IMG/VR virus record: IMGVR_UViG_3300044701_002789 | Span: 194,363-258,362 of that record | Strand: one strand, 5' to 3' | DNA length: 64,000 nt | In this document: in pieces, positions 18,453 through 40,342 of the stretch | How positions within the stretch are numbered: the stretch's first letter is position 1 | Layout of the letters: each line of letters opens with the position of its first letter | Program-made: the position numbers and the translations under genes | Notes under the pieces: generated by a model | What the model was told of the DNA's origin: nothing | What the model saw: only the letters and a program-made list of their open reading frames with translations | Databases searched by the model: none

Positions 18453-18479
18453 AATACTATAACGAGTTCTTGAATGTAT

Positions 18480-18830: not shown

Positions 18831-18842
18831 TTATTTTACTCC

Positions 18843-20297: not shown

Positions 20298-20378
20298 ATT
20301 AAAATATTTTTAACTGTTTATTTTTTATATTATATCCCTGAACCACAAGATTTTTATGTATTATATGCGTTAAAATAT

Positions 20379-22979: not shown

Positions 22980-23769
22980 TGAGTTTCTCCAAATCATATT
23001 CATTCCACCAGGATTTCCAATCAATAAAGAAATCTTTATCCCAATCTGTTTGCATATGTAATGCTAACGATGGAATTGGATTAAAACAGTAGTATCCTCT
23101 TTCATAATAAATTCGGTCAATACTTTCCATTTCCATTACTGGTGAGACTTCACTGGTTCCCATCTTGTAGAATAAATCCCAGTTCTTTTCTATTATACTC
23201 ACATGGGTCATTAAAGTAAATGCAGGATGAATATTTGTTCTCCAGTATCTGTCTTTGCCGACAACGATGTTACAAGGTACTGCAGTGTTTTGTGGGTCGT
23301 GATATTCTGCAGGTTTGTTAAAAGGAAAGATACTTGCAGGAGCACCTAAATTACAACTGAATTGATTGATTGCGTGTATCATCAGTTCAATTGAATTCTT
23401 TTGATGAAGAAAATCATCTTGAACAAAATAAACCCAATCTCTTCCAAATGATTTTCCATACTCATAACATCTCAAAATAGAAGGCATAATACCATAAGTT
23501 TCAAGATGTGTTAGGTTAATCTTGAATTTTGCAATATTGATTAATTTTTGAAGAATATCTAAGAATTCTTGAGATGAATGGTCATCAAAAATTTGCAGTT
23601 GTATTTCATAATCAGGATATTTTTCTTGAGCAAAATTCAAACTATCAATTAAAGAAAATACACAATGAGATGATACTTCTATCTTTGGTGCATTGCAGTA
23701 TCTTGTTTGACTATCATCCCGATTTCCTTTTGAGTGAGTTTGCAAAACAACTAACAAATGAGTTTTCAT
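22966..23769 (-). CDS. GT-A fold glycosyltransferase-like protein
   Basis: DDHS, YFVQDDFLH, PIPSLALH. Confidence 0.7.
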   Translation of the reverse strand: MKTHLLVVLQTHSKGNRDDSQTRYCNAPKIEVSSHCVFSLIDSLNFAQEKYPDYEIQLQIFDDHSSQEFLDILQKLINIAKFKINLTHLETYGIMPSILRCYEYGKSFGRDWVYFVQDDFLHQKNSIELMIHAINQFSCNLGAPASIFPFNKPAEYHDPQNTAVPCNIVVGKDRYWRTNIHPAFTLMTHVSIIEKNWDLFYKMGTSEVSPVMEMESIDRIYYERGYYCFNPIPSLALHMQTDWDKDFFIDWKSWWNEYDLEKLNEKN

Positions 23770-24548
23770 ATATCAAATTTGGAATATAGTTTCATATTTT
23801 CTTCTCCTATAATTTCTATAGGGTCTTGTGAGATTTTAGAAAGATTTGGACGAATAGTGTGAAGGTCTTTCAGTCCCCATGCCTCATCTTTTTCTTCTCC
23901 ACAAGCATTTTCAATATTGTGAAAAGTATTTGTGTGAGATGTAACTTCTAAAAACTCATAGATTTTATTGAGTTCTTGTTGTGGATTGTTTAGTAGTTGA
24001 TTGTATTCTACCAGATGAACCCACTCCGGATATTTATTCAGTCCATAAATCATACTCTCATAAGAAGGAGAAACATAATATCTCCAAATGTATTCTGCAC
24101 GATTGTTATTTGTAATGGAAAGATTATCTTTTTTTAAGTGATTATCAATAAAGTTATCTTGATGTCCTGTTCTTTCTATGAGGGAGATATAGGAAGTAAG
24201 AACTTCTGGAATGGGACGATAAGTTGCGACAATCTTGGGTTTGTTTGATAAGAACATTTGTACTGTATCAAGGTTCTTGCCCCAAAATCTATGTTTGTCT
24301 AATATGATTGATTTTGGAATATGATTATAGAAATTTGCAAGAACTGACTTATAGACATTATAAGAGATTGATTTGCGGTCAAAGGTGAATTGTTGGTCTA
24401 TACGATTAAAAGATTTCTCAATATCAGTCACTACATCTCCTAATGGTGATGTAGGAGATACATAAATTTCTGGATGTTGATTGAGAATTGAACCTAATAA
24501 TGTTGAACCACTTCTTGGAAGTCCTCCAAGAAAATATAAAGTTTTCAT
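23766..24548 (-). CDS. sulfotransferase
   Basis: PAPS-binding loop GLPRSGSTLL, R...EVL.S, V.Y..L...P; start moved to MKTLYF. Confidence 0.88.
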   Translation of the reverse strand: MKTLYFLGGLPRSGSTLLGSILNQHPEIYVSPTSPLGDVVTDIEKSFNRIDQQFTFDRKSISYNVYKSVLANFYNHIPKSIILDKHRFWGKNLDTVQMFLSNKPKIVATYRPIPEVLTSYISLIERTGHQDNFIDNHLKKDNLSITNNNRAEYIWRYYVSPSYESMIYGLNKYPEWVHLVEYNQLLNNPQQELNKIYEFLEVTSHTNTFHNIENACGEEKDEAWGLKDLHTIRPNLSKISQDPIEIIGEENMKLYSKFDI

Positions 24549-24556
24549 AGTTGTTT

Positions 24557-25747
24557 TTATAATGTTGGGTCGTTGTATGTGAGTGCTACCGTATGAGTAG
24601 CTCCACCATTCACTTGTTTCCAATTAGTTCCACCGGCAAATGTAGTGATTGGAGTACTTCTGTTTCCTGTAGTTGCTCCATTTCCAAGTCGTCCACTATC
24701 TCCACTACCCCAAATCCAAAGGGTTCCATCGGTCTTGATTGCTACTATGTGATCACTTCCAGCATTCACCTGTTTCCAGGTGGTTCCTCCAGCAAATGTG
24801 GTGACTGGAGTACTTATATTTCCAGTAGTTACTCCATTTCCAAGTTCTCCAGTACTTCCAAAACCCCAAGTCCATAGAGTTCCATCAGTCTTGATTGCTG
24901 CTGTGTTTGCTCTACTAACACTCACTTGTTTCCAATTGGTTCCGCCAGCAAATGTGGTGACTGGAGTACTTCTGTCTGTGGTTGAGGCATTCCCAAGATT
25001 TCCATATTGATTTCTACCCCAAGTCCATAGAGTTCCATCGGTTTTGATTGCTGCTGTGTGAGGGGCGGCGGTGCCGCTGACAGCACTTACTTGTTTCCAA
25101 TTCTTGCCACCGGCAAATGTGGTGACTGGAGTGCTTCTATTTGTAGTTTGTGCATTTCCAAGTGATCCATTACCATTAAACCCCCAAGTCCAAAGGGTTC
25201 CATCGGTTTTGATTGCTGATATGTAATCACCACCAGCACTCACTTGTTTCCAGTTAGTTCCACCAGCAAATGTGGTGACTGGAGTGCTTCTATCTGTAGT
25301 ATTTGCATTTCCAAGTTGTCCATTAGTTCCATATCCCCAAGTCCAAAGAGTTCCATCAGTTTTGATTGCTGCCGTATTCCTACCACCAACACTCACTTGT
25401 TTCCAATTGGTTCCTCCAGCAAATGTGGTGATTGGAGTACTAAAGGTTCCAGTAGTTGCTCCATTTCCAAGTTGTCCGTATCTCCCATAACCCCAAGTCC
25501 AAAGAGTTCCATCGGTTTTGATTGCTGCTACGATAGAATTTCCGCAACTTACTTGTTTCCAATTAGTTCCACCAGCAAATGTAGTAACTGGAGTGCTTCT
25601 ATTTGTAGTTTGTGCATTTCCAAGTCTTCCATTACTTCCAAAACCCCACACCCATAAGTTTCCATCACGAAATAAATCCGCAGGAATAAAGACATCATCA
25701 AAAGAATAATCAACTCCGTCTTGTCTAAAGTTGTAAAATGTGGGCAT
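24557..25747 (-). CDS. RCC1/BLIP-II repeat beta-propeller, 7 repeats
   Basis: Seven ~51-aa units KQVSxG..HT.AIKTDGTLWTWG....GxLG. Confidence 0.92.
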   Translation of the reverse strand: MPTFYNFRQDGVDYSFDDVFIPADLFRDGNLWVWGFGSNGRLGNAQTTNRSTPVTTFAGGTNWKQVSCGNSIVAAIKTDGTLWTWGYGRYGQLGNGATTGTFSTPITTFAGGTNWKQVSVGGRNTAAIKTDGTLWTWGYGTNGQLGNANTTDRSTPVTTFAGGTNWKQVSAGGDYISAIKTDGTLWTWGFNGNGSLGNAQTTNRSTPVTTFAGGKNWKQVSAVSGTAAPHTAAIKTDGTLWTWGRNQYGNLGNASTTDRSTPVTTFAGGTNWKQVSVSRANTAAIKTDGTLWTWGFGSTGELGNGVTTGNISTPVTTFAGGTTWKQVNAGSDHIVAIKTDGTLWIWGSGDSGRLGNGATTGNRSTPITTFAGGTNWKQVNGGATHTVALTYNDPTL

Positions 25748-25763
25748 TTTGGAAATCCTTAAG

Positions 25764-26117
25764 TTACTCTACAAATATTACTGAAGTATTCATCTTATCA
25801 CCCCAATTTTGAAGATACTTTTTAACATCAGGGTTCATCTTCATATTATTTATTGCAAGTGCCTTTAAGTATTGTCCGTTCTCATTATTTTCCACAGAAA
25901 CCAGTACATCACACTTATCAGGTCTCATTTCTTCAGGAAGTAGATGTTGAGACCATGCACACTGATAATTTCTACAAACCTCTGGTCGTGCCTTATGAAC
26001 TCCACAACCTCCCTCTTCAAGAAACTTACATGACTTTCCGCATCCAAAGTTCCAACCAAATGCATCACCAACCAACCAAGAACAACACGCAGTGCATTCT
26101 CCACATTCACGAAACAT
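25764..26117 (-). CDS. YkgJ-like cysteine-cluster (Zn/Fe-S) protein
   Basis: CGECTACC, CKFL, C.VH..RP.VC..Y.C. Confidence 0.85.
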   Translation of the reverse strand: MFRECGECTACCSWLVGDAFGWNFGCGKSCKFLEEGGCGVHKARPEVCRNYQCAWSQHLLPEEMRPDKCDVLVSVENNENGQYLKALAINNMKMNPDVKKYLQNWGDKMNTSVIFVE

Positions 26118-26760
26118 AATTCACCTCTCTATAAAAGTATGTATAAGGTTCGTGGTCTTCTGGTTGATATAATGACTTGAATTTACCTTCACCACTACCA
26201 ATCCAAAATTCACGGTCTAATCTAAAATCACTTTTCAAAAACTCATCATTTAATCTATTTACATAAGATGCATTTGCCCACCAAAAGTTTCCAACAAAGT
26301 GTTGAGTTCCTGCTTTCTCCCAAGATTGTCTCCCATCACTCCAAGTAGTCGGTCCTAAAATCTTAAGATTACTTCCCACTGCATCATAATTCTCCAAATA
26401 CTTCACACACTCCTTCCATCTATCAATGACGAAATACTCCATCATCAATCTCCAACTCTCTGCATTCATACTTTCTTTTGATACTCCTTTTGTATGAAAG
26501 TAAAGAACTCTATAATCTGGATTTTCTTTACAAAAATCTCTTAAGGAAATTAGAGTATCTGTTTCTTCCTTATGATTTTGATTATAGGTCACAATGGTTT
26601 TTTCTGGAATATTAAAGAGTTCCTTATTTCCATTTACTCCAAAGTGTATATGAAATGCCTCTTGTATTAATCCTGAAGTATATAATCTATGAACCTGTTG
26701 TTGGTAAATAAATGCACCCAAATTACATTGAAAAATATGGTAAAAGATTGCAAGTTTCAT
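26107..26760 (-). CDS. glycan-modification-associated protein (GT-like)
   Basis: LYFHTKG, GNFWWA and REFW motifs; gene context. Confidence 0.6.
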   Translation of the reverse strand: MKLAIFYHIFQCNLGAFIYQQQVHRLYTSGLIQEAFHIHFGVNGNKELFNIPEKTIVTYNQNHKEETDTLISLRDFCKENPDYRVLYFHTKGVSKESMNAESWRLMMEYFVIDRWKECVKYLENYDAVGSNLKILGPTTWSDGRQSWEKAGTQHFVGNFWWANASYVNRLNDEFLKSDFRLDREFWIGSGEGKFKSLYQPEDHEPYTYFYREVNYVS

Positions 26761-27536
26761 ATTTTGTAACTGTCTCCCTCCATTCCTTTAATTGTAGTCA
26801 ATCCAAGATTAGGAATACTAATCACATTTTTTTGATTTAAGAACCGATATAAAGAGTGTTCTACATCAGTACCTGCAGTGTATTGCATCATCTTTTCAAG
26901 ATAAGTAAAAGTTTTTTCAAGAGAACTTACAATCTCATTAAAGAGTATTCGGTCAAAAGACCAAAGACCAGTCACCATCATTCCTTTTGCACCATAAAGA
27001 TATGCATAGACATTCTCAAGTTCTTTTTCATCATAATTTTCTGCCTCTTGAGAAAGGTAATCATATTTTTTAATTACATATCGTTCTTCAAGAAACTTTG
27101 ATTTATAATCATTAATATCAAAGTATTCATTTAATAAGTATCTTCCAGTAAGTTTAAAAACTCTTTGACTATCTGGAAAAAGATTATGAGTTTTTATGTA
27201 ATATAAAGTATTCAATAGTCCTCTGGTTTCTAATAAAGATTTACCATAAGTAATCAGTTCTGGTCTTTTTTCAAGATTGGAATAGATTTGTTGAAGAACT
27301 GGTTCATTTGAAAAATCTAAAAACAAGTCACATTTATTTCTTAAAATATTCTTATATTCTTCCGCAAGTGTTTGATGAGAACATTCAAATAAAATAATAT
27401 AAGAAGTTGGTACTTTTTCTCTTACACATTCAATTGTTTTAAGTGTCTGTTCAAATCGTTGTTCTTCTGTAAATGCACTAAAGTTATTTTCCTGAAAATG
27501 TTTGAGTGCAGAACCAATTAGGAATAAAAATTTCAT
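26757..27536 (-). CDS. hypothetical protein, possibly GT-like
   Basis: R.EQTL.TI, FKLTGRY, D.EH; 4-bp overlaps on both sides. Confidence 0.6.
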   Translation of the reverse strand: MKFLFLIGSALKHFQENNFSAFTEEQRFEQTLKTIECVREKVPTSYIILFECSHQTLAEEYKNILRNKCDLFLDFSNEPVLQQIYSNLEKRPELITYGKSLLETRGLLNTLYYIKTHNLFPDSQRVFKLTGRYLLNEYFDINDYKSKFLEERYVIKKYDYLSQEAENYDEKELENVYAYLYGAKGMMVTGLWSFDRILFNEIVSSLEKTFTYLEKMMQYTAGTDVEHSLYRFLNQKNVISIPNLGLTTIKGMEGDSYKI

Positions 27537-27991
27537 AGGTAATCTGTATTAAAACTAATAATTATTCTTTCTTCTGTTTCTTCTTCAGTATAATGAATTA
27601 AATCACTTGAGAAAATAACCAAAAGACCTGGATAGGGTGCAATAGATTTATTTGGAAATATCAATGGTGTCTTTCCTGAAATATAAAATGCACCACTGAT
27701 GATACTTTCTTCGTGTTTATGTGCCTTGAGTTTATTTCCTGGTTGTGATATATTGAACCAACTGTTGATAATCTTAAGTGATGGAATGTGATATTTATTG
27801 CAATATGTATGAATATATTTTTCTATGATGACTTTTAATCCATTTAACTCTGGATACATTAAAATCGGCATTCCATAATTATAAGTAGAAACTCCATTTG
27901 TTACAAGACCGTGAGTACTGGTTTTGATTTGTAGAAGTTTATTTTTAATAGAATTTAGATTGAGAAAAGAAAGATTATATTCCTCTATCAT
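27533..27991 (-). CDS. 2OG-Fe(II) oxygenase-like protein
   Basis: SW.N, HKH, SGAFY, G.LVIF, H, RIIISFN. Confidence 0.8.
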   Translation of the reverse strand: MIEEYNLSFLNLNSIKNKLLQIKTSTHGLVTNGVSTYNYGMPILMYPELNGLKVIIEKYIHTYCNKYHIPSLKIINSWFNISQPGNKLKAHKHEESIISGAFYISGKTPLIFPNKSIAPYPGLLVIFSSDLIHYTEEETEERIIISFNTDYL

Positions 27992-29315
27992 TCAAAAACT
28001 CCTTTAGTTGTTTGAGGGGTTCATTCCAGTTTCTGGGTTTCTTTTGTTTAAAAAGATGAACATTATTTCCATACCACCAAGATTTATTTGTAGAACTTGT
28101 CCAAACATAGTATTCCATAATGGGAACAAAGACACAAACTTCTTTACCTTGTGATGCTGCGATGTGTGCAATGGAAGTACAGGAAGTAATCACCAAGTCC
28201 ATTTGAGATACCAGTGAGAATGTATCTGTAAAATCACGATTTTGAATATCAAAGGTTTTGATATCATAACCTTCTGGTGGTGTTTGGTCTGGTAGTTGAA
28301 GTGAATATAGGGATGCTGAGGTTTTTGAAAGAACATCAAATAATGGTTCGGGTTCAATGGAACGAAAATGTGCCTGTTCAAATCCAGAACCAGAATTCCA
28401 GAACACTCCAATCTTATATTTTTGGTCTTCTTTTAGGTATGAATATTGTTGTTCTTTTTCTGGAAGTGGTTGAAGATAGGGTTCTTGACCTAAATCTTGA
28501 ACTGTGAGATTGAGATAATAAGGTAATGCAAGAGCATAAACCCAAACTGAATTTTCTGGAAAAGTGATTTTATCATAGACACAAACTGAAGTAAACCCGT
28601 TATAATTGAAGAGTTTCACCATTTCTTTTCTGGTAGAAGTCCAGATTGGTTTCATTCCAAGTTCTTTTAGGTGTTTCATAAACCGAATGTGAATAATCTC
28701 GTCTCCTGCACCACATTGACTGTCTATGATGATTGTTTGACCTGGTGTTACGGTTCCGTCCCACTTTTTGAAAGGTGGGAGTTTCTTATTCTTATATGCT
28801 TCTACTTCTCCTGCTTTGAGAAAGTGTTGAAGACCTATATGTAAGTCATCTTTACGAAAATAATGTCCTGAAAGATTATGATATGCTTTTCGTTCTATTT
28901 CAGGTGAAAGTGATTTTTGAAGTAATTGAAACAAAAGTTTCTCTGACTTTTCTTTTTGATTAAGTGCAGAATAAGAAAATGTTTCTTCTAAAAGAAGTTC
29001 AATATCTTGTGAGTTTTTTGATTTAATCTTTGAGATTTGAGTGAGTGCCTTATCTGGGTAATTGTTTTGATTGTATGCGTTGATGAGGTTTTTTGTGGTG
29101 ATATAATTTTCTTCTTTGGTTTTTGTGAGTTTTAATGCTTTTTCGCCATAGGTAATTGCATTGGAGAAGTCTTTGATTTCAAAGAATATCTTTGCAACAT
29201 CATTGTATTGTTCAAATGTTTCTGCTCTTTTTCCAAATGCAAGGAGAACTTGTGTTGTAAGTTCCTTTTCTTCAAAGGAATGCAGGGTTTTTGTGACCAA
29301 CTCAAGGGGGTTCAT
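27975..29315 (-). CDS. TPR + GT9-like (GT-B) glycosyltransferase
   Basis: TPR N-terminus; WDG, GAGD.I..RF, YSLQ, DLVITSCTSIAH.A. Confidence 0.85.
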   Translation of the reverse strand: MNPLELVTKTLHSFEEKELTTQVLLAFGKRAETFEQYNDVAKIFFEIKDFSNAITYGEKALKLTKTKEENYITTKNLINAYNQNNYPDKALTQISKIKSKNSQDIELLLEETFSYSALNQKEKSEKLLFQLLQKSLSPEIERKAYHNLSGHYFRKDDLHIGLQHFLKAGEVEAYKNKKLPPFKKWDGTVTPGQTIIIDSQCGAGDEIIHIRFMKHLKELGMKPIWTSTRKEMVKLFNYNGFTSVCVYDKITFPENSVWVYALALPYYLNLTVQDLGQEPYLQPLPEKEQQYSYLKEDQKYKIGVFWNSGSGFEQAHFRSIEPEPLFDVLSKTSASLYSLQLPDQTPPEGYDIKTFDIQNRDFTDTFSLVSQMDLVITSCTSIAHIAASQGKEVCVFVPIMEYYVWTSSTNKSWWYGNNVHLFKQKKPRNWNEPLKQLKEFLNDRGI

Positions 29316-29342
29316 TGTGTGATTATAGTGTATCTTGAGTAT

Positions 29343-31721
29343 TTAGAATGATACAAAATCTACTGATTGGATTGCTGTTGTGTGAGCATTTCCAGCACTC
29401 ACTTGTTTCCAATTATTCCCTCCAGCAAATGTAGTGACTGGAGTGATTCTACTTATATTATTTGCATTTCCAAGTCTACCATTAGTTCCCTCACCCCAAG
29501 TCCAAAGGGTTCCATCGGTTTTGATTGCTGCTGTGTGAAAACCTCCAGCACTCACTTGTTTCCAATTCGTTCCTCCAGAAAATGTGGTGACTGGAGTACT
29601 TATGTTTGTAGTTTGTGCATTTCCAAGATTTCCATTATTTCCAAAACCCCAAGTCCAAAGAGTTCCATCGGTTTTGACTACTGATGTATGTTGATTTCCT
29701 GCACTCACTTGTTTCCAATTCGTTCCTCCAGCGAATGTTGTGACTGGAGTGCTTCTATTTGTAATATCATTAGTTCCAAGTCTTCCGTTATTTCCATAAC
29801 CCCAAGTCCAAAGGGTTCCATCGGTTTTGATTGCTGCTGTATGTTCATTTCCAGCACTCACTTGTTTCCAATTAGTTCCTCCCGCAAATGTTTCATTTGG
29901 AACCCAATCAATACTATCAAGTCCTGATCCAAGTTGACCGTTAAGATTTATACCGAACAAATAAAGCTCTTTATTTACACCATCATCATATAAAGAAATT
30001 GTATGATCTCTACCACAACTTACTTGTTTCCAATTCGTTCCTCCAGCGAATGTTGTGACTGGAGTGCTTCTATTTGTAATATCATTAGTTCCAAGTCTTC
30101 CGTTATTTCCATAACCCCAAGTCCAAAGGGTTCCATCGGTTTTGATTGCTGCTGTGTGAAAACCTCCAGCACTCACTTGTTTCCAATTCGTTCCTCCGGC
30201 AAATGTTGTGACTGGAGTGCTTCTATTTGTAGTTTGTGCATTTCCAAGTTGTCCAAAACCTCCATAACCCCAAGTCCAAAGGGTTCCATCGGTTTTGATT
30301 GCTGCGGTAAAACTACCTCCAGCACTCACTTGTTTCCAATTCGTTCCTCCAGCGAATGTTGTGACTGGAGTGCTTCTATTTGTAGTTTGTGCATTTCCAA
30401 GTTGTCCAAATGGACTACTAAAAAGACTATTTGACCCCCAAGTCCAAAGAGTTCCATCGGTTTTGATTGCTGCCGTATGAGTGGAAAAATTACTCGCCGA
30501 TATTGCTGTTCCACAACTTACTTGTTTCCAATTGGTTCCTCCAGCAAAGGTGGTAACTGGAGTACTAAAGGTTCCTGTAGTTGCTCCATTTCCAAGTCTT
30601 CCATTACTACCAAGACCCCAAGTCCAAAGAGTACCATCTGTTTTAATTGCTGCTGTGTAATTAACTCCAGCACTCACTTGTTTCCAATTGGTTCCTCCAG
30701 AAAATGTGGTGACTGGAGTGCTTCTATTTGTAGTTTGTGCATTTCCAAGTTGTCCAAAACCTCCATAACCCCAAGTCCAAAGGGTTCCATCGGTTTTGAC
30801 TACTGCTGTATAATAACCTCCAGCACTTACTTGTTTCCAGTTAGTTCCTCCAGCAAAGGTGGTAACTGGAGTACTAAAGGTTCCTGTAGTTGCTCCATTT
30901 CCAAGTCTTCCGTTATTTCCATAACCCCAAGTCCAAAGAGTTCCATCGGTTTTGATTGCTGCTGTGTGAAAACCTCCAGCACTTATTGTATATAAATCTT
31001 CTGGTTCTGATGAAGGTACATCTTTCCAATTTATTCCTCCAGCGAATGTAGTTACAGGAGTAACTTTATTGGTTCCTATAGCAAATCTTCCAAGCCTTCC
31101 ATTACCTCCATAACCCCAAGTCCAAAGGGTTCCATCGGTTTTGATTGCCGTTACATGAATAGTTCCTAAACTCACTTGTTTCCAATTCGTTCCTCCAGCA
31201 AATGTTGTGACTGGAGTGCTTCTATTTGTAATATCATTAGCTCCAAGTTTTCCATTATCACCATAACCCCAAGTCCAAAGAGTACCATCTGTTTTAATTG
31301 CTGCTGTGTAATTAACTCCAGCACTCACTTGTTTCCAATTGGTTCCTCCAGAAAATGTGGTGACTGGAGTACTTGTATCAGTAATAGTTGCATTTCCAAG
31401 TCGTCCACCACTTCCACTACCCCAAACCCAAAGGGTTCCATCGGTTTTGATTGCTGCTGTGTGAAAACCTCCAGCACTCACTTGTTTCCAATTCGTTCCT
31501 CCAGCAAATGTGGTAACTGGAGTAATTCTATCTGTAATTGCTGAATTTCCAAGATTTCCATTATTTCCAAAACCCCAACACCAAAGTTCTGGAGGAATAC
31601 CAATCTGTTGTCCAATAGAAGGATAAACACTCAACAAATAATCCTTACGAACTAACTTACTTCCCAAATCAACTCCATTACTATCTTTAAAATTGGTAGT
31701 GATATTTTGATTAGAACTCAT
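29343..31721 (-). CDS. RCC1/BLIP-II repeat protein, 14 repeats (double propeller)
   Basis: 14 units counted, two of them irregular. Confidence 0.92.
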   Translation of the reverse strand: MSSNQNITTNFKDSNGVDLGSKLVRKDYLLSVYPSIGQQIGIPPELWCWGFGNNGNLGNSAITDRITPVTTFAGGTNWKQVSAGGFHTAAIKTDGTLWVWGSGSGGRLGNATITDTSTPVTTFSGGTNWKQVSAGVNYTAAIKTDGTLWTWGYGDNGKLGANDITNRSTPVTTFAGGTNWKQVSLGTIHVTAIKTDGTLWTWGYGGNGRLGRFAIGTNKVTPVTTFAGGINWKDVPSSEPEDLYTISAGGFHTAAIKTDGTLWTWGYGNNGRLGNGATTGTFSTPVTTFAGGTNWKQVSAGGYYTAVVKTDGTLWTWGYGGFGQLGNAQTTNRSTPVTTFSGGTNWKQVSAGVNYTAAIKTDGTLWTWGLGSNGRLGNGATTGTFSTPVTTFAGGTNWKQVSCGTAISASNFSTHTAAIKTDGTLWTWGSNSLFSSPFGQLGNAQTTNRSTPVTTFAGGTNWKQVSAGGSFTAAIKTDGTLWTWGYGGFGQLGNAQTTNRSTPVTTFAGGTNWKQVSAGGFHTAAIKTDGTLWTWGYGNNGRLGTNDITNRSTPVTTFAGGTNWKQVSCGRDHTISLYDDGVNKELYLFGINLNGQLGSGLDSIDWVPNETFAGGTNWKQVSAGNEHTAAIKTDGTLWTWGYGNNGRLGTNDITNRSTPVTTFAGGTNWKQVSAGNQHTSVVKTDGTLWTWGFGNNGNLGNAQTTNISTPVTTFSGGTNWKQVSAGGFHTAAIKTDGTLWTWGEGTNGRLGNANNISRITPVTTFAGGNNWKQVSAGNAHTTAIQSVDFVSF

Positions 31722-32395
31722 TCCAGTCCTCCTAAGAAATCAAAAGGTCTTTCTGGTTGTTCACGAACCACTACATTATAAACATCATCAATGGTCGCAC
31801 ACGCATCAATTTCCTGAAGTTTTGAGAGTTCCCAGTCAAATGCCTCTTGAACTTTTAAGTCAACCTGATGAATAATATATTGAAGTTCTTCAGTGGTAAT
31901 CTCCAACCAAGTGTTTTTAAACTTAAAGTTATGAGGACCAGGAGATGCAGAAAGTTTTGCTGCTAATAAAATTCTTTCTTCTCTTGAGGTTGATACTTCT
32001 ACTTCAGTTTCATTTACTGTGAGTGTAATTGTAGTATTTTCTTTTTCTCTTCTATAAGGTGCAACTTCTTGTTTGCGACGTTCTTTGACTTCTTCAAGGG
32101 TTTTATCAGTAACTGGATAAGTCAATAAAACCTTAATAGGAACATTGTTCTCTTCAACAATTGACCAAGTAAAATTACCAATATTTTGATACTTGGGGTC
32201 GTGTGATGGAATATCTTTTTCTATTTGTAAAAGATGTGTAAGACCATCACTAAAATGAATTGGAATTTCTGTGTAACTTGAAGGATTGAGAGTTTCTTCT
32301 ACTTCAAGGTCTTCTAATTCAGCATTCATCATTCGGACATTGTAACCAATCGGTCCTAAAATCAATGAGTTGTTATGAATAAGTGCGAGTTCCAT
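31718..32395 (-). CDS. DUF4376-like tail fibre assembly/accessory protein
   Basis: K...R..KE...I, VQ.AFDWE...EI.A pattern; lies between fibre-associated genes. Confidence 0.65.
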   Translation of the reverse strand: MELALIHNNSLILGPIGYNVRMMNAELEDLEVEETLNPSSYTEIPIHFSDGLTHLLQIEKDIPSHDPKYQNIGNFTWSIVEENNVPIKVLLTYPVTDKTLEEVKERRKQEVAPYRREKENTTITLTVNETEVEVSTSREERILLAAKLSASPGPHNFKFKNTWLEITTEELQYIIHQVDLKVQEAFDWELSKLQEIDACATIDDVYNVVVREQPERPFDFLGGLE

Positions 32396-32411
32396 TGGTC
32401 TTTATGAGTAT

Positions 32412-33593
32412 TTATGAGAGTGGAAGGTCTGCTGGGATACCTGCGGTGACTGCTGCTGTGTTAGAAATCTGTTTCCAGTTAGTTCCACCAGCAAATGTAG
32501 TGACTGGAGTACTTCTATCAGTATTATTTGCATTTCCGAGTTTTCCACTAACTCCAGAGCCCCAAATCCACAAGGTTCCATCAGTCTTAATTGCTGTTAT
32601 GTAATTAACTCCACAACTAACTTGTTTCCAATTAGTCCCCCCAGCAAATGTAGTGACTGGAGTACTTCTATCAGTATTATTTGCATTTCCAAGTTGTCCA
32701 GAAGTCCCAGTACCCCAAGTCCACAAGGTTCCATCAGTCTTAATTGCTGTTGTGTGATAAAATCCACAACTTACTTGTTTCCAATTAGTCCCCCCAGCAA
32801 ATGTAGTGACTGGAGTACTTCTATCAGTATTATTTGCATTTCCAAGTTGTCCAGCATACCCATAACCCCAAGTCCAAAGAGTTCCATCGGTTTTGACTGC
32901 TGCTGTATGACTATATCCACAACTCACTTGTTTCCAGTTCGTCCCTCCGGCAAATGTGGTGACCGGAGTACTCGTGTTTCCAGTAACTATCCCGTTTCCA
33001 AGTTCTCCAAAAGACTCACTACCCCAAAGCCAAAGAGTTCCATCGGTTTTGATTGCTGCTGTACAATAACCTACAGAACTCACTTGTTTCCAGTTCGTCC
33101 CCCCGGCAAAAGTGGTAATGGGGGTGCTTCTATTTGTAGCATTTGCATTTCCAAGTTGTCCAGAATACCCACGACCCCAGGTCCAAAGAGTTCCATCTGT
33201 TTTAATTGCTGTTGTGTGATAACTTCCAAATCCCGAACTCACTTGTTTCCAGTTGGTTCCTCCTGCAAATGTGGTAACCGGGGTACTTCTTACTGTATAA
33301 CCTGCATTTCCAAGTTGTCCACTATCTCCACTACCCCAAGTCCAAAGCGTACCATCAGTTTTAATTGCTGTTGTGTGAACACTTCCAGCACTCACTTGTT
33401 TCCAATTAGTCCCCCCAGCAAATGTAGTGAGGGGGGTACTAAAGTTTCCAGTAGTTGCTCCATTTCCAAGTCTTCCATTATCACCATAACCCCAAGTCCA
33501 AAGTTCATCACCAATATATTGGTCAATTAACCAATATTCACTCACATAATAATTCTCAATGTCTCCTTCTGGGGATAAGAACTGATTAGGCAT
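32412..33593 (-). CDS. RCC1/BLIP-II repeat beta-propeller, 7 repeats
   Basis: Seven units; start overlaps the fibre gene stop by 8 bp. Confidence 0.92.
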   Translation of the reverse strand: MPNQFLSPEGDIENYYVSEYWLIDQYIGDELWTWGYGDNGRLGNGATTGNFSTPLTTFAGGTNWKQVSAGSVHTTAIKTDGTLWTWGSGDSGQLGNAGYTVRSTPVTTFAGGTNWKQVSSGFGSYHTTAIKTDGTLWTWGRGYSGQLGNANATNRSTPITTFAGGTNWKQVSSVGYCTAAIKTDGTLWLWGSESFGELGNGIVTGNTSTPVTTFAGGTNWKQVSCGYSHTAAVKTDGTLWTWGYGYAGQLGNANNTDRSTPVTTFAGGTNWKQVSCGFYHTTAIKTDGTLWTWGTGTSGQLGNANNTDRSTPVTTFAGGTNWKQVSCGVNYITAIKTDGTLWIWGSGVSGKLGNANNTDRSTPVTTFAGGTNWKQISNTAAVTAGIPADLPLS

Positions 33594-36500
33594 TTATCTT
33601 ATCCTCCAATTCTTCAATGCGAATTTGTTGTTCCTTAATTGCTTCAATTAATACTGCAACAATGTTTCCGTAAGAAACTGTTTTCAATCCTTTTGCATTT
33701 GTAGTTACAACTTCAGGTAATACCTTTTCAATTTCTTGTGCAATCACACCGATAGATGATTTATTATGTCCATCAATCCAATCATAATAAACACCATCAA
33801 TTCGTTTTACCAATTCCACTGCATTCTCAATGGGTCTTATATTTTCTTTCTGGGTTTGGTCAGATAGTGATGTGAATACAGTTGCATAAAGAGTTCCAGT
33901 GCTTGGTTGGAATTCTAATTTATTGTCTGATGCATATGTTGCGGTAGGTGTTCCGGTTGCAACATCCGAGAATGTTGGGAAGAAAATGTTTGAAGATGCA
34001 GTTTCGTTAGTGATGCTACCACTTCCACCGGAGGTTCCTTGAATACCTTGAATTGAAGTTCCTTGAGTACCTTGAATACCTGTGGTTCCTTGAATACCTT
34101 GTGTTCCTTGAGATCCTGTGGTTCCTTGGCGACCCTGTATACCTTGAGTACCTTGAGATCCTGTGATACCTTGTGTTCCTTGAGATCCTGAACCTGTAAT
34201 TCCTTGAGTACCTTGAATACCTTGGATACCTTGTGATCCTGTGATACCTTGTGTTCCTTGAGATCCTGAACCTGTAATTCCTTGGCGACCTTGAATACCT
34301 TGTGATCCCGTGGTTCCCTGGATACCTTGTGTTCCTTGTGATCCCGTGGTTCCCTGGATACCTTGTGTTCCTTGAGATCCTGTAGTTCCTTGAATACCTT
34401 GTGTTCCTTGAGATCCTGTGGTTCCTTGGATACCTTGTGTTCCTTGAGATCCTGTGGTTCCTTGGCGACCCTGTATACCTTGAGTACCTTGAGATCCTGT
34501 GGTTCCTTGGATACCTTGAGTTCCTTGAGAACCAGTAGTTCCTTGAATACCTTGAGTTCCTTGAGATCCTGTGGTTCCTTGGAGACCCTGTATACCTTGA
34601 GTTCCTCCAGATGACCAACTTACTCCAATTCCAGTAGAAATTAATATCGAACCTGCAGTACCTACCTGATTATTACTATCATAAAGACCATTGCGAATTC
34701 TAATATTTCCAACTATATCTAATTTTTGTGATGGATTGGTAGTTCCCAAACCAATGTTCCCATCAAAAGGTGCAAGTTGTATAGTTCCATTTGCATCCAC
34801 ATCAATACTTGGAATACCGGAAACATCGTTAACACTAAAGATAGAACCACTTGTAAGATTATTTGTAATGCTGAATAATTGTCCAGCAGACGCTTCAAAT
34901 GATAGTGTCCCAGAATTGAGAGTATCATAATGAATAATATCAATAATAGTTCCAATACCAACTGTACCAATACCAGATGATGGTCCACTATAAGTTAAAC
35001 TTGTACTTCCAGTTGGGTTATTAGATGCATCTTTATAAACAATTTGATTTGCAGAACCAGCAACAGGACCTGTTATTCCTTGAATACCTTGAGTTCCTTG
35101 AGATCCTGTGGTTCCCTGAATACCTTGAGTTCCTTGAGATCCTGTGGTTCCCTGAATACCTTGAGTACCTTGAGATCCTGTGGTTCCTTGAGATCCTGTG
35201 GTTCCCTGAATACCTTGAGTACCTTGAGAACCAGTGGTTCCTTGAATACCTTGAGTTCCTTGAGATCCTGTGGTTCCTTGACGACCTTGAATACCTTGAG
35301 AACCAGTGGTTCCTTGAATACCTTGAGTTCCTTGAGATCCTGTGGTTCCCTGAATACCTTGAGTACCTTGAGATCCTGTGGTTCCCTGGATACCTTGAGT
35401 TCCTTGAGATCCTGTGGTTCCTTGAATTCCTTGAGTACCTTGAGATCCTGTGGTTCCTTGAGATCCTGTGGTTCCCTGAATACCTTGTGTTCCCTGGATA
35501 CCTTGTGTTCCTTGAGAACCTGTGGTTCCCTGAGAACCTGTGGTTCCTTGAATTCCTTGAGTACCTTGAGATCCTGTGGTTCCTTGAGATCCTGTGGTTC
35601 CCTGGATACCTTGTGTTCCTTGAGAACCAGTTGTTCCTTGACGACCTTGAATACCTTGAGATCCTGTGGTTCCTTGAATTCCTTGTGTTCCCTGGATACC
35701 TTGTGTTCCTTGAGATCCTGTGGTTCCCTGAGAACCTGTGGTTCCTTGAATTCCTTGAGTACCTTGAGATCCTGTGGTTCCCTGGATACCTTGTGTTCCT
35801 TGAGATCCTGTGGTTCCCTGGATACCTTGTGTTCCTTGAGATCCTGTGGTTCCTTGACGACCTTGAATACCTTGAGAACCTGTGGTTCCTTGAATACCTT
35901 GAGTTCCTTGAGATCCTGTGGTTCCCTGAATACCTTGAGTACCTTGAGATCCTGTGGTTCCTTGGATACCCTGAACACCTTGCAGTGCAGCACTTTGAAT
36001 AGTATCTTTCTTTAACTGACCATCAGTTACATCATAGAATAAAATAAAATCATTACTTGCTGCGGCAGTTTGAGTTCTATCATTAATTAATCCAGGATTT
36101 GCACTTCTAATATTGGAAATTGTTACTCCAGTACCTAAAGTAGTAGAAGATAAAACCTCAGTACCCCCAATTTCATATACTTTTCCAACTTCAAGATTAA
36201 CATTATCACTAAATTTTAATGCGGAATTAGTGTTATCCCAGGTAATTGTTTTTCTTATATTTGTAGAACCAATACCAATTCCTGCACCATCAAGGAGTAT
36301 ATTTGTTCCAATAGTAGATGCAACTCCAATTTGATAATCTGCAAGTTCAATAGTTGTAGAATTTACTTGTGTAGTTGTTCCGTCAACATACAAATCACCT
36401 TTAATTCTTACAAGTCCAGTATTATCTCCTATTGTAGTTGGGTCAATAATAAGTTCAGTTGGACCATTAATTTGATTTACATACAGTGATGTTCCATCAA

Positions 36501-37581
36501 AAGTTAAATTTGGAGAACCAGTTGGATTATTTGAACCATCTTTATATACTACTTGATTTGCAGAACCAGCAACAGGACCTGTTGTTCCTTGAATTCCTTG
36601 AGTACCTTGAGATCCTGTGGTTCCTTGAATTCCTTGAGTACCTTGAGATCCTGTGGTTCCTTGAGATCCTGTGGTTCCTTGGATTCCTTGAGTTCCTTGA
36701 GATCCTGTGGTTCCCTGGATACCTTGAGTTCCTTGAGATCCTGTGGTTCCTTGACGACCTTGAATACCTTGAGATCCTGTGGTTCCTTGACGACCTTGAA
36801 TACCTTGAGATCCTGTGGTTCCTTGAATACCTTGTGTTCCTTGAGATCCTGTGGTTCCCTGAGAACCTGTGGTTCCCTGAATACCTTGAGTTCCTTGAGA
36901 ACCTGTGGTTCCCTGAATACCTTGAGTTCCTTGAGATCCTGTGGTTCCCTGGATACCTTGAGTTCCTTGAGATCCTGTGGTTCCCTGGATACCTTGAGTA
37001 CCTTGAGTACCTTGAGTACCTTGAGATCCTGTAGTTCCTTGAGATCCTGTGGTTCCTTGAATACCTTGTGTTCCTTGAGATCCTGTGGTTCCTTGAGAAC
37101 CTGTGGTTCCCTGAATACCTTGAGTTCCTTGAGATCCTGTGGTTCCTTGAATACCTTGAGTACCTTGAGTACCTTGAGAACCTGTGGTTCCTTGACGACC
37201 TTGAATACCTTGAGAACCTGTGGTTCCCTGGATACCTTGAGTACCTTGAGTACCTTGAGATCCTGTAGTTCCTTGGATTCCTTGAGTACCTTGTGATCCT
37301 GTGGTTCCTTGAACTCCTTGCAATGCAGCAGTTGATATTGATTCCCACTTAATACCAGAACCAGTGGATAATAGAACTGATGTTGCAGCACCCACTTGAT
37401 CAAAACTATCATAAATTCCACCACGAATTCTTACATCTCCCGCAACATCTAATTCTTGTGTTGCATTCGTGGTTCCAATACCAACCTTACCAGTAACCTC
37501 AAGTACTATTTGATTTTCAGTATAAGAAGTAATACCGATTCTGAGATTTCTTTGACGATTACTAATATATCCTTTAGGCAT
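33586..37581 (-). CDS. long collagen-like tail fibre with C-terminal peptidase S74 intramolecular chaperone
   Basis: Three G-X-Y blocks, VGIGT modules, C-terminal SD...K.NI, GVIAQE, VSY, LIEAIKE. Confidence 0.9.
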   Translation of the reverse strand: MPKGYISNRQRNLRIGITSYTENQIVLEVTGKVGIGTTNATQELDVAGDVRIRGGIYDSFDQVGAATSVLLSTGSGIKWESISTAALQGVQGTTGSQGTQGIQGTTGSQGTQGTQGIQGTTGSQGIQGRQGTTGSQGTQGTQGIQGTTGSQGTQGIQGTTGSQGTTGSQGTQGIQGTTGSQGTTGSQGTQGTQGTQGIQGTTGSQGTQGIQGTTGSQGTQGIQGTTGSQGTQGIQGTTGSQGTTGSQGTQGIQGTTGSQGIQGRQGTTGSQGIQGRQGTTGSQGTQGIQGTTGSQGTQGIQGTTGSQGTTGSQGTQGIQGTTGSQGTQGIQGTTGPVAGSANQVVYKDGSNNPTGSPNLTFDGTSLYVNQINGPTELIIDPTTIGDNTGLVRIKGDLYVDGTTTQVNSTTIELADYQIGVASTIGTNILLDGAGIGIGSTNIRKTITWDNTNSALKFSDNVNLEVGKVYEIGGTEVLSSTTLGTGVTISNIRSANPGLINDRTQTAAASNDFILFYDVTDGQLKKDTIQSAALQGVQGIQGTTGSQGTQGIQGTTGSQGTQGIQGTTGSQGIQGRQGTTGSQGTQGIQGTTGSQGTQGIQGTTGSQGTQGIQGTTGSQGTTGSQGTQGIQGTQGIQGTTGSQGIQGRQGTTGSQGTQGIQGTTGSQGTTGSQGTQGIQGTTGSQGTTGSQGTQGIQGTQGIQGTTGSQGTTGSQGTQGIQGTTGSQGTQGIQGTTGSQGTQGIQGTTGSQGTQGIQGTTGSQGIQGRQGTTGSQGTQGIQGTTGSQGTQGIQGTTGSQGTTGSQGTQGIQGTTGSQGTQGIQGTTGSQGTQGIQGITGPVAGSANQIVYKDASNNPTGSTSLTYSGPSSGIGTVGIGTIIDIIHYDTLNSGTLSFEASAGQLFSITNNLTSGSIFSVNDVSGIPSIDVDANGTIQLAPFDGNIGLGTTNPSQKLDIVGNIRIRNGLYDSNNQVGTAGSILISTGIGVSWSSGGTQGIQGLQGTTGSQGTQGIQGTTGSQGTQGIQGTTGSQGTQGIQGRQGTTGSQGTQGIQGTTGSQGTQGIQGTTGSQGTQGIQGTTGSQGTQGIQGTTGSQGIQGRQGITGSGSQGTQGITGSQGIQGIQGTQGITGSGSQGTQGITGSQGTQGIQGRQGTTGSQGTQGIQGTTGIQGTQGTSIQGIQGTSGGSGSITNETASSNIFFPTFSDVATGTPTATYASDNKLEFQPSTGTLYATVFTSLSDQTQKENIRPIENAVELVKRIDGVYYDWIDGHNKSSIGVIAQEIEKVLPEVVTTNAKGLKTVSYGNIVAVLIEAIKEQQIRIEELEDKINA
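34030..37321 (-). repeat. three collagen-like coding repeat blocks (~34030-34606, ~35066-35982, ~36575-37321)
   Basis: GTT-GSQ-GTQ-GIQ-GRQ triplets with near-identical codons. Confidence 0.9.
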
Positions 37582-40334: not shown

Positions 40335-40342
40335 TATTTATA
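40335..40342 (-). promoter_or_regulatory. T4-type late promoter
   Basis: TATAAATA upstream of 40282. Confidence 0.75.

What the first reader, a model, noticed from the sequence alone, without database searches (positions are those of the whole stretch)
24557..33593. 28 interchangeable RCC1 repeat cassettes across three genes with hypervariable loops
Seen: 7+14+7 units of ~153 bp. The scaffold (STPVTTFAGGTNWKQVS / AIKTDGTLWTWG) is nearly invariant even at DNA level across the three separate genes. Variation is concentrated in three loops: after VSxG (GFH, VNY, NEH, RDH, plus insertions such as TAISASNFSTH), after WG (YGNN, YGGF, RNQY, SESF), and after LG (NAQTTNR, NGATTGTF, TNDITNR, NANNTDR). 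Identical loop variants recur in new combinations and in different genes, e.g. NAQTTNR and NGATTGTF in both 24557 and 29343, and SGDSG in both 24557 and 32412. Known: such loops form the binding faces of RCC1/BLIP-II propellers. Inference: ongoing gene conversion or recombination shuffles loop cassettes, giving a combinatorial binding repertoire at the fibre without a reverse transcriptase.
Basis: partly seen in the sequence, partly recalled or inferred. Interest (0 to 1): 0.8.

Follow-up and report, generated by a model that had tools for sequence, protein, structure and literature searches.

The report
Recombining RCC1 propeller repeats in cyanophage
A freshwater cyanophage carries three tail-fibre-linked genes built from 28 near-identical RCC1 propeller blades, which swap sequence with one another over evolutionary time while seven loop positions on one face are kept diverse; this matches a way of diversifying a binding surface known from fungal immune receptors and not, as far as my searches show, described in phages.

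Summary
Three minus-strand genes (24557-25747, 29343-31721, 32412-33593) encode 7, 14 and 7 RCC1 blades of about 51 aa, with variation concentrated in three loops. Loop variants that recur in new combinations are identical at nucleotide level.

One claim is overstated. The scaffold is not invariant at DNA level: synonymous divergence is about 0.5, the same as in the loops.

- Blades do not cluster by gene or by position. Across eight related phages they cluster by genome, which is concerted evolution.
- Exchange tracts break inside units. Recent tracts of 82-134 nt are intragenic; A-B tracts reach at most 49 nt.
- Seven loop positions have pN/pS above 1 in 12-14 of 14 genomes. By strand topology and alignment to UVR8 they lie on one propeller face.
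- No adenine-specific pattern fits a DGR (diversity-generating retroelement), and no reverse transcriptase was found in the window.

Shuffling is not fast. Four assemblies of this phage are identical here, and a related pair shares 12 kb of repeats with one indel.

The module is conserved in isolate S-SRM01 and in hundreds of freshwater viral contigs, with blade counts in multiples of seven, up to about 42. A role at the fibre is inferred from gene context only.

The parts
24557..25747 (-). RCC1 gene A, 396 aa: a 30-aa N-terminal segment followed by 7 blades (units A1-A7; coordinates).
   Evidence: Pfam RCC1 matches 7 stretches at E 5e-66. The orthologue is S-SRM01 gp344, with the same N-terminus.
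29343..31721 (-). RCC1 gene B, 792 aa: a 45-aa N-terminal segment followed by 14 blades (two propellers' worth). Orthologues usually have 7 blades. Units B10/B11 carry an aberrant junction that looks like a propeller end followed by a propeller start.
   Evidence: Pfam RCC1 matches 14 stretches.
32412..33593 (-). RCC1 gene C, 393 aa, 7 blades. Its start overlaps the stop of the collagen-like fibre gene by 8 nt.
   Evidence: The AF2 model has pTM 0.75 and four strands per unit. Foldseek gives TM 0.73-0.79 to UVR8, RPGR, HERC2 and RCC1.
31718..32395 (-). Small DUF4376 protein between C and B, with weak hits to PHROG tail-fibre families. It overlaps the start of B by 4 nt.
   Evidence: A gene sits at the same position in S-SRM01.
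33586..37581 (-). Collagen-like tail fibre protein, 1331 aa, with a C-terminal S74 intramolecular chaperone domain, immediately upstream of gene C.
   Evidence: Pfam Collagen matches 15 stretches, plus Peptidase_S74. PHROG tail fibre families match at E 1e-163. TRF finds 9/18/36-nt repeats.
25764..29315 (-). Five conserved genes between B and A: a TPR-like protein (27975-29315), a 2OG-Fe(II) oxygenase (27533-27991) and three hypothetical proteins. Neighbouring ORFs overlap or lie at most 27 nt apart.
   Evidence: S-SRM01 has the same gene order, as do the IMG/VR loci, where the B-to-A spacing is about 4 kb.
30022..30155 (-). The longest exact internal repeat, 134 nt, identical to 29707-29840. 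It spans the B9/B10 and B11/B12 junctions. One IMG/VR contig (L039) ends inside it at position 30148.
31266..31370 (-). 105-nt exact tract shared by B2/B3 and B6/B7 (30615-30719). B2 and B6 are identical from alignment nt 84 to the end of the unit (their last ~90 nt) but have different WG and LG loops, so this is a breakpoint inside a unit.
40335..40342 (-). TATAAATA, the T4-type late-promoter motif, 53 nt upstream of tail fibre gene 37925-40282. No further copy occurs on this strand before 12137. It is the putative start of the late transcript that would include the RCC1 genes (inferred).
   Evidence: All 5 copies lie on the coding strand, but the total count does not exceed chance.

Best explanation
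The three genes encode RCC1-type seven-bladed beta-propellers: one propeller each in A and C, and two propellers' worth of blades in B. They belong to a late tail-fibre gene cluster of a T4-like freshwater cyanophage.

The blades evolve in concert. Homologous recombination between the conserved scaffold stretches (gene conversion and unequal crossing-over) copies tracts of about 40-130 nt from blade to blade. This happens often within a gene and more rarely between the three genes. As a result, blades resemble other blades of the same genome more than blades at the same position in related phages.

Purifying selection holds the four strands and the two loops of one face (omega 0.07). Seven positions in the loops of the opposite face are kept different: WG-x-N-x-x-G, LG-x-N-x, and S-x-G-x-x-H. 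Recombination places existing loop variants into new combinations and changes blade number in steps that keep multiples of seven.

Shown here: the anatomy, the fold, the mosaic, the concerted evolution, the excess of amino-acid change at loop positions, and the absence of a DGR signature.

Inferred: the variable face binds a ligand, most likely a host surface component, and the proteins are accessory adhesins of the fibre apparatus. The process works over evolutionary time, not within a single infection or bloom.
For: Fold: Pfam RCC1 and WD40_RLD; PDB sequence hits to UVR8 at E 2e-55; AF2 model plus Foldseek TM 0.73-0.79.

Mosaic:
- Shared loops are identical at nucleotide level and occur in all four combinations.
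- Segment distances are uncorrelated.
- PHI is significant at windows of 5-10 informative sites.
- The GENECONV-like test shows a large excess of significant pairs.
- Exact tracts of 134, 105, 91, 84 and 82 nt occur at unit offsets of 1 to 4, with the 134- and 105-nt tracts re-checked.

Concerted evolution:
- Blades cluster by genome (48 changes against 120 shuffled) with no positional signal (133 against 131).
- Blades at the same position in two genomes are barely more alike than blades at different positions.
- Scaffold pS within a genome, both within and between genes (0.22-0.49 across the 14 genomes), is lower than pS between W and the same genome (0.39-0.57) in every case but W's own between-gene value.
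- The three genes are nevertheless old: N-termini and gene order are conserved in S-SRM01 and about 60 IMG/VR loci.

Selection: scaffold omega is 0.07 and loop omega 1.4. Positions 6, 8, 9, 16, 38, 40 and 41 have pN/pS above 1 in 12-14 of 14 genomes and hold 11-18 residue types, rich in S, N, Y and G.

One face: strand order from DSSP. The xx of GxxHT aligns with W-R of UVR8's GWRHT motif.

Fibre context: gene C overlaps the stop of a collagen-like S74 fibre gene, a DUF4376 tail-fibre-like gene lies between C and B, and in S-SRM01 the long tail fibre distal subunit is directly upstream. An RCC1-like protein of phage GAP32 was found in virions by mass spectrometry (PMC5259590).

Unit gain and loss between near-identical genomes. 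Blade counts of 7, 14, 21 and about 42.
Against: - No direct evidence places these proteins in the virion or shows that they bind anything. The S-SRM01 paper does not mention them.
- The loop columns were chosen after seeing the data. NG86 ratios ignore recombination and codon bias, so 'diversifying selection' is better read as 'selection against homogenising the loops', and it is not a formal site-model test.
- In this phage, synonymous divergence between the three genes (0.42) is about the same as to the nearest related genomes (0.39-0.45). Inter-gene exchange has therefore been rare recently here.
- The permutation null of the GENECONV-like test ignores the spatial clustering of conserved sites, which inflates the many scaffold-only hits involving B11.
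- I had no model coordinates. The one-face statement rests on strand topology and homology, not on measured geometry.
Confidence: 0.6

Rival explanations
1. A fast, programmed repertoire generator: loop segments are shuffled so often that a single phage population carries many variants, comparable to DGR or antigenic-variation systems.
For: Recombination signals are present. Near-identical genomes differ by loss of one unit (L053/L058) and by a 21-nt loop indel (L032/L033). The unique B10-B11 unitig has somewhat lower depth than its flanks (70 against 91-116 in X1; 120 against 141-169 in X2).
Against: Three full IMG/VR assemblies and a fourth contig are 100% identical over 15.6-21.2 kb that include the genes. 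Perfect unitigs of the loops lie at flank-like depth in 4 runs from 2 samples. L032 and L033 have zero substitutions in 12 kb of repeats while a flanking region differs at 315 sites. Units differ at dS 0.3-0.5, so homogenising events are rarer than point mutation.
Confidence: 0.08
2. An ordinary structural repeat protein with unconstrained loops. The blades were recently amplified and the loops drift neutrally, so there is no selected binding repertoire.
For: Pooled loop omega is only 1.4 on columns chosen after the fact. Prokaryotic propellers with very similar blades are known to arise by amplification (my own knowledge; related background in PMC3797127).
Against: The same seven positions exceed the synonymous rate in 12-14 of 14 genomes, at raw ratios of 1.3-2.0 that approach saturation. 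The 3-gene, 7-blade architecture predates the split of these genomes, so the similarity is maintained rather than new. Blade number stays a multiple of 7, which points to selection on closed propellers.
Confidence: 0.15
3. The propellers act inside the infected cell or on host enzymes (BLIP-II-like inhibitor, host takeover) rather than as virion adhesins. The evolutionary mechanism would be the same.
For: RCC1 and BLIP-II propellers are general protein-binding modules (my own knowledge). PHROGs files phage RCC1 families under DNA metabolism, by name only. The cluster also holds sulfotransferase, glycosyltransferase, methyltransferase and 2OG oxygenase genes, so not every gene here is structural.
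Against: Gene C is translationally coupled to a fibre gene, and a tail-fibre-like DUF4376 gene lies between C and B. The RCC1 protein of GAP32 is in virions. No close homologue exists in one genome per species of 185,579 bacterial and archaeal species.
Confidence: 0.2
4. Diversity-generating retroelement or other targeted mutagenesis of the loops.
For: Hypervariable codons are 74% NNT. The residue mix is S/N/Y/G/A/T/D-rich with almost no K, E, M or W, which superficially resembles AAY-to-NNY mutagenesis. A neighbouring gene has a sub-threshold Mtd_N hit.
Against: Variability is not adenine-specific: by majority base, A 0.19, C 0.18, T 0.15, G 0.12. Scaffold synonymous sites differ as much as loop ones, which homing from one template would erase. 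No RT domain appears in any scanned ORF of the window, and no template/variable repeat pair was found. The NNT bias fits fast change at codon positions 1-2 on an AT-rich codon background.
Confidence: 0.02
5. Assembly artefact: the mosaic or the count of 14 blades comes from mis-joined short reads in a repeat.
For: One contig (L039) ends inside the 134-nt exact repeat. Logan unitigs break at the repeats, and many related phages co-occur in the same samples.
Against: Identical sequence appears in three full-length assemblies. The longest exact repeat, 134 nt, is shorter than a typical read. Perfect unitigs bridge the unique parts. Isolate S-SRM01 shows the same architecture. Fourteen is a multiple of 7, like the counts in relatives.
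Confidence: 0.03

Closest known systems
Fungal NLR WD40 repeats with high internal conservation (Podospora anserina het-d/het-e nwd family; PMC1805685, PMC2873952, PMC4986451)
   Same: Beta-propeller repeats that are highly similar to each other. [quoted passage not shown] Diversity comes from reshuffling of repeats without a reverse transcriptase (abstract read).
   Different: The repeat family differs (RCC1, about 51 aa, against WD40, 42 aa). There is no NACHT/NB-ARC domain and no RIP. The setting is a virus, not a fungus. Blade identity is lower here (about 76% nt), and no allelic hypervariability was seen between near-identical genomes.
RCC1-like propellers UVR8, RCC1, RPGR, HERC2 and BLIP-II
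   Same: The same fold and repeat motif. The variable xx of GxxHT corresponds to W-R of UVR8's GWRHT, which lies on its interaction face (alignment; role of the motif from my own knowledge).
   Different: In cellular RCC1 proteins the blades are far more diverged from each other (my own knowledge). No evidence points to GEF or photoreceptor function. The closest solved relative is about 31% identical.
Synechococcus phage S-SRM01 gp335, gp337 and gp344 (NC_070963), annotated 'regulator of chromosome condensation'
   Same: Orthologous three-gene module with the same neighbours and N-termini, directly downstream of the long tail fibre distal subunit. Scaffold divergence is equal within and between genes (pS 0.31 against 0.31).
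   Different: 57-63% protein identity. The middle gene has 7 blades rather than 14, and gp335 shows 6 units. Loop motifs are phage-specific (LGDNTTT, WGxNxxGQ). Its paper does not discuss these genes.
Multi-copy RCC1-like genes of jumbo phages (GAP32 GAP_001, 121Q, PBECO4; PMC5259590)
   Same: Phage-encoded RCC1/BLIP-II propellers present in several copies per genome. One was detected in virions by mass spectrometry. GAP32 K4F6B8 is a Foldseek hit at E 2e-15.
   Different: They are distant in sequence (about 23% identity). Whether their blades evolve in concert was not examined.
T-even gp38 adhesin and the DGR target Mtd (other phage receptor-binding diversification systems; my own knowledge)
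   Same: A conserved scaffold carries short hypervariable segments, and the gene sits next to the distal fibre gene.
   Different: The folds are unrelated. gp38 diversity arises by recombination between phages, and Mtd diversity by RT-driven adenine mutagenesis. Here the donors are sister blades in the same genome. The DGR features were tested and not met.

Membership tests
RCC1-like repeat propeller (Pfam PF00415 / PF25390) | Repeats of about 50 aa that match the RCC1 profile above the curated threshold. | tested here: met
   Pfam finds 7, 14 and 7 RCC1 stretches at 205-428 bits against a cutoff of 21.7. WD40_RLD scores 244-540 bits against a cutoff of 150.
RCC1-like repeat propeller (Pfam PF00415 / PF25390) | Seven-bladed propeller fold with four strands per blade. 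| tested here: met
   The AF2 model of gene C has pTM 0.75 and four strands per unit. Foldseek gives TM 0.73-0.79 to UVR8, RPGR, HERC2 and RCC1. Mean pLDDT is only 67.
Diversity-generating retroelement target | A reverse transcriptase and a template repeat nearby. | tested here: not met
   No RT domain appears in the window ORFs scanned with Pfam. No template/variable repeat pair was found. The rest of the 258-kb genome was not available.
Diversity-generating retroelement target | Variation restricted to template adenines, with all other positions identical. | tested here: not met
   Variability by majority base is A 0.19, C 0.18, G 0.12, T 0.15. Scaffold dS is 0.5.
Repeat arrays with high internal conservation under concerted evolution and diversifying selection (fungal nwd type) | Repeats are exchanged within and between paralogous genes. 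| tested here: met
   In W itself the between-gene signal is weaker (pS 0.42 against 0.32).
Repeat arrays with high internal conservation under concerted evolution and diversifying selection (fungal nwd type) | A few positions on the interaction surface have omega above 1. | tested here: inconclusive
   pN/pS exceeds 1 at 7 positions in 12-14 of 14 genomes. No recombination-aware site model was run, and the face was assigned by topology and homology.
Repeat arrays with high internal conservation under concerted evolution and diversifying selection (fungal nwd type) | An NLR architecture: a NACHT/NB-ARC domain N-terminal to the repeats. | tested here: not met
   Only a 30-45 aa N-terminal segment precedes the repeats, and no other Pfam domain matches. 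This system works like the fungal family but is not a member of it.
Phage receptor-binding or tail-fibre accessory protein | Presence in the virion and binding to the host surface. | not testable with these tools
   Only context is available: overlap with the S74 collagen-like fibre gene, the DUF4376 neighbour, and S-SRM01 synteny with the distal fibre subunit. By analogy, GAP32 has virion mass-spectrometry support.

The most novel reading that the evidence does not exclude
A clade of freshwater cyanophages may use arrays of RCC1 blades (21 to more than 70 per genome, spread over three or four fibre-linked genes) as a self-contained, RT-independent diversification system for host recognition. 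Sister blades would serve as the donor pool, and recombination between scaffold stretches would create new combinations of loop variants on the propeller's binding face. Whole-propeller expansion (7 to 14, 21 and 42 blades) would multiply the binding faces. That would make it a viral counterpart of the fungal NLR repeat system.
Probability: 0.3. Interest if true: 0.75.

Novelty: new variant of a known kind. Interest (0 to 1): 0.6.

Why it matters
Phages are known to diversify receptor-binding proteins in three main ways: recombination with other phages, invertible segments, and reverse-transcriptase-driven mutagenesis. This locus points to a further route. An intragenomic pool of near-identical propeller blades exchanges sequence, while selection keeps a small set of surface positions different.

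The module is abundant. The scans returned 222 viral and 438 metagenome relatives. It is confined to phages and is present in a cultured phage-host pair, S-SRM01 and Synechococcus KCZYC6. The idea that it governs adsorption or host range in freshwater picocyanobacteria can therefore be tested directly.

It also offers a natural series of 7-, 14-, 21- and about 42-blade RCC1 proteins for studying propeller evolution.

Tried and rejected
- DGR reading. It was prompted by the NNT bias of hypervariable codons. It was rejected because variability is not adenine-specific, scaffold and loop dS are equal, and no RT or template repeat was found.
- Population variants from reads. Only Logan contigs were available. 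Hundreds of unitigs from co-occurring related phages map to the scaffold, so the 'joints' and alternative loops cannot be assigned to this phage. Only the perfect unitigs at flank-like depth were usable.
- Search for near-identical strains of this phage. IMG/VR returned only 100% identical copies. The metagenome scan found nothing above 72% identity, and GenBank phages gave only S-SRM01 at 63%. Micro-evolution was therefore read from other close pairs, L032/L033 and L053/L058.
- Simple +7 duplication as the origin of the 14 blades. This was rejected because best partners lie at offsets of 1, 2, 3, 4, 9 and 12 units.
- Positional orthology of blades between genomes. Essentially none was found. 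The exceptions are the C-terminal blades, which group together, and a 52-aa 'NGxxTGxx' blade type.
- Literature. 'Cyanophage' with 'regulator of chromosome condensation' returned two irrelevant or marginal papers. The eLife 2020 conflict-systems paper did not contain the repeat-diversification analogy I had recalled.
- Model geometry. The tools return no coordinates, so the loop face was argued from strand order and homology.

Full report
**Where the window comes from.** All genes in and around the region lie on the minus strand. The window carries tail-fibre and virion proteins typical of T4-like cyanophages, along with collagen-like fibres with S74 chaperone domains, 2OG-Fe(II) oxygenase, sulfotransferase, glycosyltransferases, T4-type RNA ligase and helicase. 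Over 21,179 nt that include all three genes, it is 100% identical to three IMG/VR genomes of about 258 kb. It is also identical to a fourth contig, which ends inside gene B. The only cultured relative is the freshwater Synechococcus phage S-SRM01 (Kyanoviridae), at about 74% nucleotide and 63% protein identity.

**The observation.** The ORFs 24557-25747 (A), 29343-31721 (B) and 32412-33593 (C) encode 7, 14 and 7 units of 51-63 aa, mostly 51-52 aa, behind N-terminal segments of 30-45 aa.
- TRF reports periods of 153/156 nt.
- Pfam RCC1 and RCC1-like-domain profiles match far above threshold.
- The closest solved structures are UVR8, HERC1/2, RPGR and RCC1.
- An AlphaFold2 model of C (pTM 0.75, mean pLDDT 67) shows four strands per unit.
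- The scaffold is nearly invariant as protein, and variability sits after WG, after LG and after VS.

**The one overstated claim.** It is not. Scaffold synonymous divergence is pS 0.37 (dS about 0.5), the same as in the loop codons (dS 0.44). This matters because it removes any need for a mutator aimed at the loops.

**Mosaic structure within this phage.**
- Blades are on average 76% identical within a gene and 74% between genes. On a maximum-likelihood tree they do not group by gene: 11 label changes against 12.1 for shuffled labels, where 2 is the minimum possible.
- Distances in the three loops and two scaffold blocks are mutually uncorrelated, with Mantel r of about -0.1 to 0.2 and none significant.
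- The pairwise homoplasy index is significant at short range and not at a window of 20 informative sites.
- In a GENECONV-like test, 81 of 378 pairs have an unexpectedly long identical tract where 3.8 are expected, including 76 of 245 inter-gene pairs at p<0.05. Three tracts are globally significant (B10-B12, B2-B6, B1-B9), and all of them end inside a unit. Its null ignores the clustering of conserved sites, so the scaffold-only hits should be discounted.
- In raw DNA the longest exact tracts are 134, 105, 91 and 84 nt inside B and 82 nt between C5 and C6. A-B matches reach 49 nt, and no exact match of 40 nt or more links C to A or B.
- Tracts include scaffold and cross unit borders. What moves is a stretch bounded by homology, not a loop 'cassette'.

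**Comparative evidence.**
- S-SRM01 has the same module: sulfotransferase, RCC1, four hypothetical genes, 2OG oxygenase, TPR protein, RCC1, a small gene, RCC1, the long tail fibre distal subunit and a baseplate wedge gene. Its gene-specific N-termini match ours.
- About 60 IMG/VR loci share this order, out of 222 hits. A further 438 metagenome stretches encode relatives.
- No close homologue exists in a collection of one genome for each of 185,579 bacterial and archaeal species.
- The three genes are therefore old, yet on a tree of 172 blades from eight genomes the blades cluster by genome (48 changes against 120 shuffled). They cluster only weakly by gene (68 against 81) and not at all by position (133 against 131).
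- Scaffold synonymous divergence is lower within a genome, both within and between genes, than between W and that genome in the other 13 genomes. In S-SRM01, within-gene and between-gene values are equal (0.31).
- This is concerted evolution across the three genes. In the window's phage the inter-gene value (0.42) is close to that against its nearest relatives (0.39-0.45). Recent homogenisation here has been mostly intragenic and is tied to the expansion of B from 7 to 14 blades.

**Selection.**
- Scaffold codons have omega of about 0.07. Pooled loop codons, chosen after seeing the data, have omega of about 1.4.
- Taken site by site and genome by genome, positions 6, 8, 9 (WG-x-N-x-x-G), 16 (LG loop) and 38, 40, 41 (S-x-G-x-x-H) have nonsynonymous diversity above the genome's synonymous diversity in 12-14 of 14 genomes, at raw ratios of 1.3-2.0.
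- These positions hold 11-18 residue types, rich in S, N, Y, G, A, T and D.
- DSSP gives the strand order TPVTTF, NWKQVS, HTAAIK, LWTWG. In a four-strand meander successive loops alternate faces. The strand4-strand1 loop (WG plus LG) and the strand2-strand3 turn (VS) therefore share one face, and the invariant AGGTN and KTDG loops form the other.
- The xx of GxxHT aligns with W-R of UVR8's GWRHT motifs. From my own knowledge, those motifs line UVR8's interaction face.

**Tempo.**
- Four assemblies of this phage are identical in this region.
- In public runs from two samples, perfect unitigs of the loop regions lie at roughly flank depth. The many alternative loop unitigs there cannot be separated from co-occurring relatives.
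- L032 and L033 share 12 kb of RCC1 repeats (genes of 1738 and 2291 aa) with no substitution and one 21-nt indel in an LG loop, while a neighbouring region differs at 315 sites.
- L053 and L058 differ by exact loss of one blade in gene A.
- Unit gain, unit loss and loop indels therefore happen, but the arrays are not hypermutable.

**Rivals.**
- A DGR is excluded. Variability is not adenine-specific, scaffold and loop dS are equal, and no RT or template repeat lies in the window. The 74% NNT bias of hypervariable codons fits rapid change at codon positions 1-2 on AT-rich codons.
- Assembly artefact is unlikely.
- Neutral loops are hard to reconcile.
- A non-virion role cannot be excluded.

**Function (inferred).** Gene C overlaps the stop of a 1331-aa collagen-like fibre protein with an S74 chaperone. 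A DUF4376 gene with weak tail-fibre hits separates C from B. Neighbouring ORFs in the cluster overlap or lie at most 27 nt apart. The nearest T4-type late promoter motif lies upstream of the preceding fibre gene. An RCC1-like protein of phage GAP32 is a virion component, and related jumbo phages carry many copies (PMC5259590). I therefore favour accessory adhesins of the fibre apparatus, at moderate confidence.

**Comparison and novelty.** The mechanism matches the WD40 repeats of fungal NLR genes het-d and het-e: concerted evolution within and between paralogues, variable repeat number, and positive selection at a few propeller-surface positions (PMC1805685; PMC2873952). The fungal family's NLR architecture is absent here, so this system works like that family without belonging to it. 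RCC1 genes in phages are already annotated, including the S-SRM01 orthologues. My literature searches found no description of their concerted evolution, loop diversification or expansion in sevens. I rate it a new variant of a known kind, interest 0.6.

Noticed in passing
window 27533-29315 (-), with 33586-37581, 18843-20297 and 62400-64000: A TPR-like protein gene overlaps a 2OG-Fe(II) oxygenase gene (PF13759), and the pair is conserved in S-SRM01. It sits among several collagen-like fibre genes. The pairing recalls collagen prolyl hydroxylases, which combine a TPR-like substrate-binding domain with an oxygenase, so it might hydroxylate the phage's collagen-like fibres.
   Followed up: no
window 46126-47769 (-): The N-terminus of this 547-aa structural protein hits Pfam Mtd_N, the N-terminal domain of the major tropism determinant that is the DGR target of Bordetella phage. 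The hit is E 1e-5 at 25.9 bits, just under the cutoff of 26.3. No reverse transcriptase was found in the window.
   Followed up: partly
L016, L017, L018, L032, L033, L060 (RCC1 genes): Relatives carry giant RCC1 genes with blade counts in multiples of seven. There are 21 blades in L016 gene A, L017/L018 gene B and one L060 gene. L032/L033 gene B (2291 aa) has about 42. L032 gene C (1738 aa) has 28 or more. Some genomes have a fourth RCC1 gene (L008, L025).
   Followed up: partly
window 29814-30128 (units B10-B11): Unit B10 ends with a tail like the C-terminus of gene A (HTISLYDDGVNKE against HTVALTYNDPTL). Unit B11 starts aberrantly (LYLFGINLNG...SIDWVPNE). This looks like a relic propeller end/start junction inside gene B, flanked by the 134-nt exact repeat, and suggests the 14-blade gene arose by a nested or fused duplication.
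   Followed up: partly
window 30939-31127 (unit B4); L032 gene C units 6, 8, 11: A special blade type has an insertion of about 12 aa after NWK (DVPSSEPEDLYTIS here, ADTPxxxPEDLYTL in L032). It recurs in distant genomes, so some blade types persist despite the homogenisation.
   Followed up: no
window 28125-28218 and 28833-28869 (TPR-like gene): Clusters of linked SNPs appear at roughly 10-40% of depth in runs X2-X4 but not in X1. A co-occurring strain, or a recombinant patch in the gene next to RCC1 gene B, would explain this.
   Followed up: no
window 50032-50301 (-), gene 49671-51362: Three tandem 93-nt (31-aa) repeats at 85-95% identity lie inside a 563-aa protein with no family match.
   Followed up: no
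window 14091-24623 (-): Downstream of RCC1 gene A lies a run of sugar- and methyl-modifying enzymes: sulfotransferase, GT2 glycosyltransferases, a TylF/Methyltransf_24-GT2 fusion, FkbM methyltransferases and a GT17-like protein. They are interleaved with a collagen-like fibre gene and a tail-assembly chaperone. This may be a virion or host-surface glycan modification island.
   Followed up: no
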